Below, in pieces: positions 43,913-44,520 of a stretch of 64,000 nt of DNA. Source of the stretch: Octopus bimaculoides (Eukaryota); contig NC_069001.1 of the NCBI RefSeq assembly GCF_001194135.2, forward strand, positions 34,709,146 to 34,773,145, read 5' to 3'. The notes under the pieces were generated by a model that was given only the letters and a program-made list of their open reading frames with translations, made no database searches and had not been told where the DNA came from. How positions within the stretch are numbered: position 1 is the first letter of the stretch; each line of letters starts with the position of its first letter. The translations under genes were made by a program, and so were the position numbers.

Positions 43913-44157
43913 AATTCCTGTAGTCAGTTTTATGTTTGGTTGTTGTGTTGGTGTCATAGTAGTAGCTATAGTTGTGGTGGGTGTTGTTTTATCGCATACA
44001 TATACACATACTTACACACACACACACACACATACACAGAGTTCAGTAAATAGCTGTAAATGTTTGTACACAGATGAAATATTACTAAATTAAATTCTCT
44101 TGTTGTTTATGTGCAACGAGAGATTAATTAGTGTTATTAGTAGCTATCTATATTTGT

Positions 44158-44196
<39 letters not shown>

Positions 44197-44520
44197 ATGT
44201 GTTTGTATGTCTTGTGTGAATCTATATATATAAATATATAAATTGATAGACAGAAAGATACATACATACACAGTCACAAATACATATGTATATATATATA
44301 TATATATGTATGTATGTACACACATACACACACACTCACACACACATACGCACATATATATATATAGACATAAGTGTATTTTAGTTTCTCTCTGTTTATT
44401 TGTATACTTTAGAATTTTGCATTGATACAATTTTGCATAAACAAATTGTGGTTCTGTTGCTAAGTTGCTACTACTATGACACCAACACAACAACCAAACA
44501 TAAAACTGACTACAGGAATT
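43913..44520. repeat. Perfect 54-bp inverted repeat, arms 43913-43966 and 44467-44520
   Basis: AATTCCTGTAGTCAGTTTTATGTTTGGTTGTTGTGTTGGTGTCATAGTAGTAGC and its exact reverse complement. Confidence 0.95.

What the first reader, a model, noticed from the sequence alone, without database searches (positions are those of the whole stretch)
43913..44520. Perfect 54-bp inverted repeat 500 bp apart, without TSD or recognisable transposon body
Seen: 54/54 complementarity between 43913-43966 and 44467-44520, ending abruptly on both sides with no target-site duplication. The spacer is ordinary microsatellite-laden DNA plus a small hairpin (~44083-44132). The sequence matches none of the repeat families in the window, and one arm is very A-rich. 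Established: long-range intronic duplexes act as ADAR editing-complementary sequences, splicing docking/selector elements and circRNA-promoting flanks. Inference: either a selected RNA duplex, which is notable in a heavily editing coleoid, or a very recent template-switch or fold-back event.
Basis: partly seen in the sequence, partly recalled or inferred. Interest (0 to 1): 0.72.

Follow-up and report, generated by a model that had tools for sequence, protein, structure and literature searches.

The report
Young 54-bp inverted duplication, non-coding
Two perfectly complementary 54-base stretches 500 bases apart are really present in this repeat-rich non-coding DNA, but they look like a recent accidental copying event, with no sign of a selected RNA structure, so the finding is real but ordinary.

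Summary
Bases 43913-43966 and 44467-44520 are 54/54 Watson-Crick complementary, 500 nt apart, and the match stops dead on all four sides. It is the only inverted repeat of at least 95% identity outside simple repeats in the window.

- **Context.** I found no exon, protein domain, transposase or Rfam family nearby. The spacer is ordinary microsatellite-rich DNA.
- **Age.** Ambient SINE copies are only 68-86% alike, so the arms are much younger than the surrounding repeats.
- **No sign of RNA-level selection.** There is no G·U pair, mismatch or bulge. That is the mark of one-step DNA copying.
- **Direction of copying.** The left arm sits inside a longer G+T-rich tract that runs past its boundary. 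The right arm boundary is a sharp flip in strand composition. The left arm therefore looks like the source.
- **Best reading (about 0.4).** A recent inverted micro-duplication that is not a transposon, made by a template switch or a staggered-break micro-inversion. If transcribed, it would form double-stranded RNA only incidentally.
- **Rivals.** A MITE, because the arms end in palindromic AATT, which could hide a 4-bp target-site duplication. A short-read assembly misjoin. A selected duplex.
- **Limits.** No external copy or orthologue could be reached, and the organism could not be identified.

The parts
43913..43966 (+). Left arm, AATTCCTGTAGTCAGTTTTATGTTTGGTTGTTGTGTTGGTGTCATAGTAGTAGC (T25 G15 A9 C5). 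It is the probable source copy.
   Evidence: The inner 33 nt are 82% G+T and continue without a break into a 92% G+T stretch beyond the arm.
44467..44520 (+). Right arm, the exact reverse complement of the left arm (A25 C15 T9 G5). It is the probable derived copy.
   Evidence: At its inner boundary G+T flips from 74% (44444-44466) to 18% (44467-44499).
43967..44466 (.). 500-nt spacer of ordinary microsatellite-rich DNA: (CATACA)n/(AC)n 43995-44038, (TG)n 44155-44193, (AT)n 44284-44307 and (AC)n 44318-44356.
   Evidence: Tandem Repeats Finder covers 33%, within the normal range for the window. BLAST finds only microsatellite-type matches elsewhere. There is no inverted or direct similarity next to the arms beyond the microsatellites.
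44083..44132 (.). Small local hairpin in the spacer, with an 11-bp core stem (one G·U in RNA) and outer A/T pairs.
   Evidence: It appears in the minimum-free-energy structure. Folded alone it gives -19.1 kcal/mol. It is off-centre relative to the arms, and nothing ties it to them.
43913..43916 (.). AATT at the outer end of the left arm. It is palindromic and could be a hidden 4-bp target-site duplication.
   Evidence: Read directly from the sequence.
44517..44520 (.). AATT at the outer end of the right arm, the partner of 43913-43916.
   Evidence: Read directly from the sequence.
43934..43990 (+). 57-nt G+T-rich tract, resembling a degenerate trinucleotide repeat, that runs across the inner boundary of the left arm.
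   Evidence: 82% then 92% G+T. Only 1.8% of 24-nt windows in the whole window reach 87%.

Best explanation
This is a young inverted micro-duplication that is not a transposon. In a single replication or repair event, 54 nt of local sequence were copied in reverse-complement orientation about 0.5 kb away. The likely source is the left copy, which lies inside a longer G+T-rich tract. Two mechanisms give this result. One is a polymerase template switch, a longer-range form of the four-point or MMBIR-type event. The other is a micro-inversion of the roughly 550-bp segment in which one breakpoint was a staggered cut that was filled in, leaving the staggered 54 nt at both ends in opposite orientation. 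What is shown: the repeat, its perfection, its uniqueness in the window, its youth relative to ambient repeats, and the asymmetry of its context. What is inferred: the mechanism, the direction of copying and neutrality. The consequence is most likely incidental. If the region is transcribed on either strand, the arms would form a 54-bp perfect A-form duplex of about -95 kcal/mol, closing a 500-nt loop. That is a generic substrate for promiscuous ADAR editing or Dicer, not a tuned regulatory element.
For: - **Real and non-random.** 54/54 Watson-Crick pairs, with no G·U, mismatch or bulge.
- **One-step origin is documented.** Template switching creates perfect stems in a single event, with patterns up to 59 bp reported (PMC8794818; model in PMC5453318).
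- **Young.** The 95% upper bound on arm-to-arm divergence is 5.4%. SINE copies in the same window are 68-86% identical. At 86% identity the chance of 54/54 is 3e-4.
- **Asymmetric context.** The G+T-rich tract 43934-43990 crosses the left arm boundary without a break, whereas the right arm boundary is a composition flip. That fits an arbitrary slice of local DNA pasted elsewhere.
- **No visible target-site duplication.** There is no flanking direct repeat and no extended similarity beyond the arms. A young insertion from most transposon superfamilies would still show an intact duplication. Lengths of 3, 5, 6, 7, 8 and 9 bp cannot be hidden, because the outer 6-mer and 8-mer of the arms are not palindromic.
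- **Not part of a repeat family seen here.** No other exact or diverged arm copy exists in 64 kb, and no transposase or other domain was found in the window.
- **Size fits a known process.** Inversion-associated inverted duplications of non-repetitive sequence range from 46 bp to 1.9 kb and often come from one breakpoint only (PMC1885836).
- **Folding.** Both strands' predicted structures pair the arms completely.
Against: - The ancestral state is unknown. No orthologue, second assembly or read set could be reached, so neither the direction of copying nor the orientation of the spacer is tested.
- Documented short template switches use templates within about 100 nt (PMC7954356). Here the distance is 500 nt and the copy is near the top of the reported length range.
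- Staggered-break inversions have been documented at chromosomal scale, not for segments of about 0.5 kb.
- The palindromic AATT ends keep a transposon reading alive.
- Genome-wide copy number is unknown. A family of a thousand copies would still be expected to be absent from the rest of a 64-kb window.
- The assembly is short-read and gapped, with known duplication artefacts.
Confidence: 0.4

Rival explanations
1. This is a young MITE-like non-autonomous DNA transposon of about 600-608 bp. Its 50-54-bp terminal inverted repeats are the arms, and its target-site duplication is the palindromic AATT (or AT) that merges into the inverted repeat.
For: The unit is 608 bp, a MITE-like size. The inverted termini are perfect and sharp-edged, and the unit has no coding capacity. 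The outer 4 nt AATT occur as a direct repeat at both ends. The left flank is A/T-rich, with (TTAT)n at 43843-43897. Absence of other copies from 64 kb says little about a family of moderate copy number.
Against: From memory, I know of no superfamily with an AATT target: piggyBac and Kolobok use TTAA and Tc1/mariner uses TA. One literature search turned up no family with an AATT target. The termini show no CAGT, CAG/TAG, CACTA or GGG-type motif. The interior matches nothing but microsatellites. G+T-rich motifs next to the two arms are in direct, not inverted, orientation. No transposase remnant or second copy was found in the window.
Confidence: 0.2
2. This is an assembly artefact. The two arms are copies of a repeat with two or more copies that really lie elsewhere or further apart, and they were joined through the microsatellites of the spacer. 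Alternatively, the arrangement was created during contig extension or gap closing.
For: The window is a short-read scaffold with 15 N-gaps. It carries perfect duplications on either side of gaps: 39207-39433 equals 39732-39958 around gap 39434-39729, and 51510-51615 is 98% identical to 51883-51988 around gap 51622-51882. The spacer contains four microsatellites where misjoins are easy.
Against: The inverted repeat lies 4.2 kb and 3.0 kb from the nearest gaps, inside a 7.8-kb contig. The artefacts actually seen are direct and touch gaps, not inverted and internal. All four arm junctions run on into unique sequence. It is the only such inverted repeat in the window, with no recurring artefact length. 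The arm has no match to plasmid or vector sequences.
Confidence: 0.12
3. This is a selected long-range RNA duplex, such as an ADAR editing-complementary pair, a splicing or circRNA-promoting pair, or a hairpin precursor of small RNAs.
For: A 54-bp perfect duplex of -94.7 kcal/mol forms in transcripts of either strand. One arm carries 25 adenosines, all paired with U. In Octopus bimaculoides hyper-editing is exceptionally high and follows long, nearly perfect double-stranded RNA (PMC5625713).
Against: No exon, domain or Rfam family was found in the window, so nothing is there to be edited, skipped or circularised. The complete absence of G·U pairs and mismatches indicates DNA-level copying, not maintenance at the RNA level. 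By the published criterion, potential double-stranded RNA of this kind is common: 0.44% of random 50-mers genome-wide in octopus and 0.87% of bases in this window. Most such duplexes are incidental products of repeats. Transcription, editing and conservation are all untested, and the organism is unverified.
Confidence: 0.05
4. These are two independently inserted fragments of one dispersed repeat family that happen to lie in opposite orientation.
For: This is the usual origin of local inverted repeats. The same window holds such pairs at 37818-37940/38008-38130 (86%, a family with further copies) and 57832-57902/58994-59064 (84.5%).
Against: Independent fragments would not share both boundaries exactly and be 100% identical. 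The family-derived pairs in the window are 84-86% identical. No other family member was found in the window, even at low stringency.
Confidence: 0.08

Closest known systems
Template-switch mutations (four-point model; Löytynoja & Goldman 2017, PMC5453318; Mönttinen & Löytynoja 2022, PMC8794818)
   Same: A stretch of nearby sequence is copied in reverse complement in one event. This instantly gives a perfect Watson-Crick stem with abrupt ends and no target-site duplication.
   Different: Documented events are mostly 10-30 nt, with the template within about 100 nt. The largest pattern reported was 59 bp. Here 54 nt were copied across 500 nt. The ancestral sequence needed to call such an event is not available.
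Inverted duplications at inversion breakpoints from staggered breaks (Ranz et al. 2007, PMC1885836)
   Same: Non-repetitive sequence is duplicated in inverted orientation at the two ends of a segment, often from one breakpoint only. The reported size range of 46 bp to 1.9 kb includes 54 bp.
   Different: Those inversions are chromosomal in scale, whereas this segment is about 0.55 kb. Whether the spacer is inverted relative to an ancestor is unknown.
MITEs and other short terminal-inverted-repeat transposons
   Same: Total length of about 0.6 kb, perfect inverted termini with sharp outer ends, no coding capacity, and an A/T-rich left flank.
   Different: There is no unambiguous target-site duplication, only a possible hidden AATT or AT. 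No recognised terminal motif is present. Inverted termini of 50-54 bp are long for a MITE whose interior is not itself palindromic. There is no second copy in 64 kb, and the interior is indistinguishable from background DNA.
Inverted-repeat double-stranded RNA substrates of promiscuous ADAR hyper-editing (inverted Alu pairs; octopus and frog repeats, Porath et al. 2017, PMC5625713)
   Same: It meets the published structural criterion of a reverse-oriented match of at least 40 bp and over 95% identity within 2 kb. It would form a long perfect duplex if transcribed.
   Different: It is not built from two copies of a repeat family. Transcription and editing are unknown.
Site-selective editing-complementary duplexes (for example the GluA2 Q/R and R/G sites; from my own knowledge)
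   Same: Long-range pairing between two parts of a pre-mRNA.
   Different: Those duplexes are imperfect, include an exon, and are conserved with compensatory change. None of these properties is seen or testable here.

Membership tests
MITE / terminal-inverted-repeat DNA transposon | Terminal inverted repeats at both ends of a short unit (under about 800 bp) | tested here: met
   Perfect 54-bp arms bound a 608-bp unit.
MITE / terminal-inverted-repeat DNA transposon | Target-site duplication flanking the inverted termini | tested here: inconclusive
   There is no direct repeat outside the arms. Only a palindromic AATT (4 bp) or AT (2 bp) inside the arm ends could serve. Duplications of 3, 5, 6, 7, 8 and 9 bp are excluded.
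MITE / terminal-inverted-repeat DNA transposon | Multiple copies in the genome | not testable with these tools
   There is no second copy in the 64-kb window. The genome itself is not available. Metagenome, viral and prokaryotic genome scans gave 0 hits.
MITE / terminal-inverted-repeat DNA transposon | Terminal motif or termini shared with an autonomous element that encodes a transposase | tested here: not met
   No Pfam domain was found in the 150 most complex reading frames of the window. From memory, the termini AATTCCTGTAG / CCTGTAG match no superfamily motif I know.
Short-range template-switch mutation | A stretch that is the exact reverse complement of nearby sequence, with abrupt switch points | tested here: met
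   54/54 complementary with non-pairing bases on all four sides.
Short-range template-switch mutation | Template within about 100 nt of the copy | tested here: not met
   The arms are 500 nt apart. The criterion comes from PMC7954356.
Short-range template-switch mutation | Ancestral or outgroup sequence lacks the derived copy | not testable with these tools
   No orthologous sequence could be retrieved.
Staggered-break inversion with inverted duplication | Inverted duplication of unique sequence at the two ends of a segment | tested here: met
   The arms are unique in the window and flank the 500-nt spacer. The size lies within the 46 bp-1.9 kb range of PMC1885836.
Staggered-break inversion with inverted duplication | The enclosed segment is inverted relative to the ancestral arrangement | not testable with these tools
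   No outgroup is available.
ADAR / double-stranded RNA substrate (structural sense) | Reverse-oriented match of at least 40 bp and over 95% identity within 2 kb (criterion of PMC5625713) | tested here: met
   It is the only such pair outside simple repeats in the window.
Selected editing, splicing or circRNA duplex | Transcribed, lying next to or containing an exon, and conserved with compensatory changes | not testable with these tools
   No exon or domain was detected in the window. No RNA data or orthologues are available.
Selected editing, splicing or circRNA duplex | Signs of maintenance at the RNA level (G·U pairs, tolerated mismatches or bulges) | tested here: not met
   All 54 pairs are Watson-Crick.
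Assembly artefact | Duplicate touches a scaffold gap or contig end | tested here: not met
   The nearest gaps end at 39729 and start at 47511. The true gap-edge artefacts in the window are direct repeats.
Assembly artefact | No support from single reads that span the whole arrangement | not testable with these tools
   No reads are available.

The most novel reading that the evidence does not exclude
The locus is a newly born structured-RNA gene caught at birth. On this reading, one template-switch event created a perfect 54-bp hairpin with a 500-nt loop inside a transcribed region of a heavily editing animal. The hairpin now acts as an ADAR sink or hyper-editing site, as an endo-siRNA precursor, or as a circRNA-promoting pair.
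Probability: 0.05. Interest if true: 0.6.

Novelty: new member of a known kind. Interest (0 to 1): 0.2.

Why it matters
If the neutral reading is right, the locus matters only in two small ways. It is a clean example of how a single DNA-level event can create a long perfect stem. It is also a marker for checking this assembly with long reads. It would become interesting only if RNA data showed that the duplex is transcribed and processed. In that case it would be a datable, single-step origin of a double-stranded RNA element. That bears on how editing-rich genomes acquire ADAR substrates that do not come from repeat families.

Tried and rejected
- **Independent assemblies.** I looked up the two reading frames that cross the arms (159 aa and 88 aa). 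Neither is on record.
- **Other copies in public DNA.** I scanned for arm 22- and 23-mers in metagenome contigs (twice), viral contigs and prokaryotic genome contigs. All gave 0 hits.
- **Protein-level searches.** I searched with an 84-aa translation across the right arm, with a reading-frame remnant I read by eye as the 3' end of a LINE (58611-58883, minus strand), and with a SINE translation, in order to find copies or identify the organism. All returned 'no candidate'. The claim that this is a coleoid stays unverified.
- **Literature string search.** A search for a SINE core sequence found 0 papers. A search for a transposon family with an AATT target found nothing relevant.
- **Genes and transposases.** Pfam found nothing real in the 10 and then the 150 most complex stop-to-stop frames. 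The best E-value was 7.5e-4 among 150 queries, on a low-complexity family.
- **Known RNA families.** Rfam over the 7.8-kb contig gave only sub-threshold microsatellite-type miRNA matches, none on the arms. ARAGORN found no tRNA.
- **A larger decayed palindrome or a direct duplication of the flanks.** Nothing beyond microsatellites was found. The apparent direct similarity upstream of both arms scores 47, against 37 ± 6 in shuffles, which is not significant.
- **A paralogous empty site.** The immediate flanks have no paralogue in the window.
- **Vector or adapter origin.** There is no plasmid match. From memory, there is only an 8-nt resemblance to a SMRTbell adapter.
- **Microhomology at the junctions.** I rejected this as uninformative. 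Any priming microhomology would itself be counted inside the maximal inverted repeat.

Full report
**1. The observation**

The stretch 43913-43966 (AATTCCTGTAGTCAGTTTTATGTTTGGTTGTTGTGTTGGTGTCATAGTAGTAGC) is the exact reverse complement of 44467-44520. That is 54 of 54 positions, with 500 nt between the arms. The neighbouring bases do not pair on any side: A/A outside and T/T inside. Chance cannot produce it. The expectation is about 4e-25 for 59 kb with a 2-kb range. Each arm half, searched with up to 3 mismatches, gives 2 matches against 0 in 100 shuffles.

A self-comparison of the whole window shows that this is the only inverted repeat of at least 95% identity outside simple repeats. The right arm is A-rich (A25 C15 T9 G5). 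The small hairpin at 44083-44132 is present, with an 11-bp core stem and -19 kcal/mol.

The spacer is microsatellite-laden but unremarkable. Tandem Repeats Finder covers 33% of it. The window median is 20%, and 23% of 500-bp windows reach the same level.

One correction is needed. 'No TSD' is true for flanking direct repeats. But the outer four bases of each arm are AATT, which is its own reverse complement. A 4-bp (AATT) or 2-bp (AT) target-site duplication would therefore be invisible inside the inverted repeat.

**2. Context**

The window is a gapped scaffold with 15 runs of N, 10-956 nt long. The repeat sits inside a 7.8-kb contig (39730-47510), 4.2 and 3.0 kb from the nearest gaps.

The assembly does contain artefacts. 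There is a perfect 227-bp direct duplication on either side of gap 39434-39729, and a 98% identical 106-bp one around gap 51622-51882. These are direct repeats that touch gaps, which is unlike the feature under study.

I found no gene. All long reading frames are translations of simple repeats. The 150 most complex stop-to-stop frames have no credible Pfam domain. ARAGORN finds no tRNA. Rfam gives only sub-threshold microsatellite-type miRNA matches, none on the arms.

About 170 nt upstream of the left arm's (TTAT)n-rich flank lies one copy (43400-43580) of a SINE-like family. This family has more than ten copies in the window, 68-86% identical to one another. The immediate flanks and the right flank have no paralogue in the window.

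**3. What could not be reached**

- Neither reading frame that crosses an arm is on record in the contig index.
- Arm 22- and 23-mers have no exact match in metagenome, viral or prokaryotic genome contigs.
- Protein searches with a translation across the right arm, with a reading-frame remnant I read as the 3' end of a LINE, and with a SINE translation all found no candidate.
- The arm does not match plasmid or vector sequence.

As a result, the organism is unverified, including the 'coleoid' premise. Genome copy number, read support, orthologues and transcription are all untested.

**4. What the sequence itself says**

(a) *Perfection.* All 54 pairs are Watson-Crick, with no G·U, mismatch or bulge. 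Selection on an RNA helix tolerates G·U pairs and, over time, produces them. From my own knowledge, the classical site-selective editing duplexes are imperfect. Perfect complementarity at the DNA level is the mark of copying.

(b) *Youth.* With no differences in 54 positions, arm-to-arm divergence is below 5.4% at 95% confidence. If the arms were as old as the ambient SINE copies (at most 86% identity), the chance of 54/54 would be at most 3e-4.

(c) *Asymmetry.* The inner 33 nt of the left arm are 82% G+T, and the next 24 nt beyond the arm are 92% G+T. Only 1.8% of 24-nt windows reach 87%. One 57-nt tract (43934-43990) therefore runs straight across the arm boundary. At the right arm, the boundary is a flip from 74% G+T to 18% G+T. 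The left copy looks at home in its surroundings. The right copy looks pasted in.

(d) *Nothing beyond the arms.* There is no inverted or direct similarity beyond the arms apart from microsatellites. An apparent direct similarity upstream of both arms is not significant: it scores 47 against 37 ± 6 in shuffles.

(e) *No other copies.* A Smith-Waterman scan finds no diverged arm copy in the window. The best score is 18, and shuffled arms reach 22.

(f) *Folding.* Transcripts of either strand would pair the arms completely in both the minimum-energy and the centroid structure. The duplex energy is -94.7 kcal/mol.

**5. Explanation**

The best reading is a recent one-step inverted micro-duplication that is not a transposon. 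Two known processes give exactly this anatomy.

- *Template switching.* It copies a nearby stretch in reverse complement and creates perfect stems in a single event (PMC5453318; PMC8794818, with patterns up to 59 bp). The caveat is that documented cases use templates within about 100 nt (PMC7954356), and here the distance is 500 nt.
- *Staggered breaks at an inversion breakpoint.* After fill-in and end joining, they leave the staggered segment at both ends of the inverted piece in opposite orientation. In Drosophila, 17 of 29 inversions show such duplications of non-repetitive sequence, 46 bp to 1.9 kb long, often from one breakpoint only (PMC1885836). The caveat is that those inversions are large, whereas this one would be a 0.55-kb micro-inversion.

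I cannot separate the two without an outgroup. Together I give them about 0.4.

**6. Rivals**

*MITE (about 0.2).* Size, perfect sharp termini, lack of coding capacity and the hidden AATT all fit. Against it:
- A young insertion from most superfamilies would show an intact duplication of 3, 5, 6, 7, 8 or 9 bp, or TA, or TTAA. None of these is possible here.
- I know of no family with an AATT target, and a literature search found none.
- The termini carry no familiar motif.
- The interior is indistinguishable from background DNA.

*Assembly misjoin (about 0.12).* The scaffold quality and the four microsatellites in the spacer make it possible. However, the repeat is internal to a contig, all four junctions run into unique sequence, and the artefacts seen elsewhere are of a different type.

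*Two independent fragments of a repeat family (about 0.08).* This is the origin of the other local inverted pairs in the window, but those are 84-86% identical and belong to families with further copies. Identical boundaries together with 100% identity argue against it here.

*Selected RNA duplex (about 0.05).* The structure is certainly competent. But I found no exon nearby, the pairing is too perfect, and potential double-stranded RNA of this kind is common. By the criterion of Porath et al. (over 95% identity, at least 40 bp, reverse-oriented, within 2 kb), 0.44% of random 50-mers qualify genome-wide in Octopus bimaculoides (PMC5625713). In this window 0.87% of bases qualify, mostly microsatellites, and this pair alone accounts for 0.18%. 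The same paper concludes that such structures are mostly incidental products of repeats and are edited promiscuously.

**7. Comparison, novelty and verdict**

The feature works like a template-switch or breakpoint-associated inverted duplication. Structurally it qualifies as an ADAR-type double-stranded RNA substrate. It cannot be filed as a MITE, because the target-site duplication is inconclusive and a terminal motif or autonomous relative was not found. It cannot be filed as a selected duplex either, because there are no signs of RNA-level maintenance and its context is untestable.

It is a new instance of a known kind of structural mutation. It is real in the sequence, not due to chance, probably neutral, and of low interest unless RNA data show that it is used. 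The decisive tests are listed in the next-steps field: genome-wide copy number, long-read confirmation, an orthologous locus and hyper-editing analysis. They are simple, but they lie outside these tools.

Noticed in passing
39207-39433 and 39732-39958; 51510-51615 and 51883-51988: There are perfect (227 bp, 100%) and near-perfect (106 bp, 98%) direct duplications lying exactly on either side of the N-gaps 39434-39729 and 51622-51882. They are redundant contig ends, a scaffolding or gap-closing artefact.
   Followed up: partly
37818-37940 and 38008-38130: This is an inverted pair of about 123-bp copies of a repeat family, 86% identical, with a 67-bp spacer. Further copies of the family lie at 33574-33670 and 46095-46184 (77-80% identity). 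It is a much longer, though imperfect, potential double-stranded RNA than the finding.
   Followed up: partly
38224-38352: This is a compact imperfect palindrome whose outer 21 nt (GAAAAAGTCGTCAGAATTTTG) pair perfectly with the other end. It looks like a MITE or fold-back element, and there is no other copy in the window.
   Followed up: partly
57832-57902 and 58994-59064; reading-frame remnants 58442-58883 (minus strand): A 71-bp inverted pair (84.5% identical) lies 1.1 kb apart and encloses frame-shifted reading-frame remnants. By eye these resemble the C-terminal part of a LINE ORF2, with motifs GxPxLxFKDxCKxDMK and a Cys/His knuckle. They have no Pfam or database hit.
   Followed up: partly
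43400-43580, 40384-40567, 19450-19605, 23972-24118, 49247-49392, 43211-43332, 18792-18946, 28970-29070 and others: An abundant SINE-like family of about 150-180 bp, often followed by (ATT)n or (ATC)n tails, has copies that are 68-86% identical to one another. ARAGORN finds no tRNA-like head in the window.
   Followed up: partly
8000-16000; also 684-1532, 10086-10676, 42700-43190: There are strongly strand-asymmetric tracts, with GC skew down to -0.7, and long degenerate trinucleotide arrays of the (CAC/CAT/ATC)n type. These produce spurious His-, Ile- and Asp-rich reading frames of 200-500 codons.
   Followed up: no
whole window: Translations of the window's most abundant repeat and of the LINE-like remnant share no 5-residue words with any protein in the 5.8-billion-sequence collection. 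No arm k-mer occurs in any DNA collection. The source organism therefore could not be identified with these tools.
   Followed up: yes
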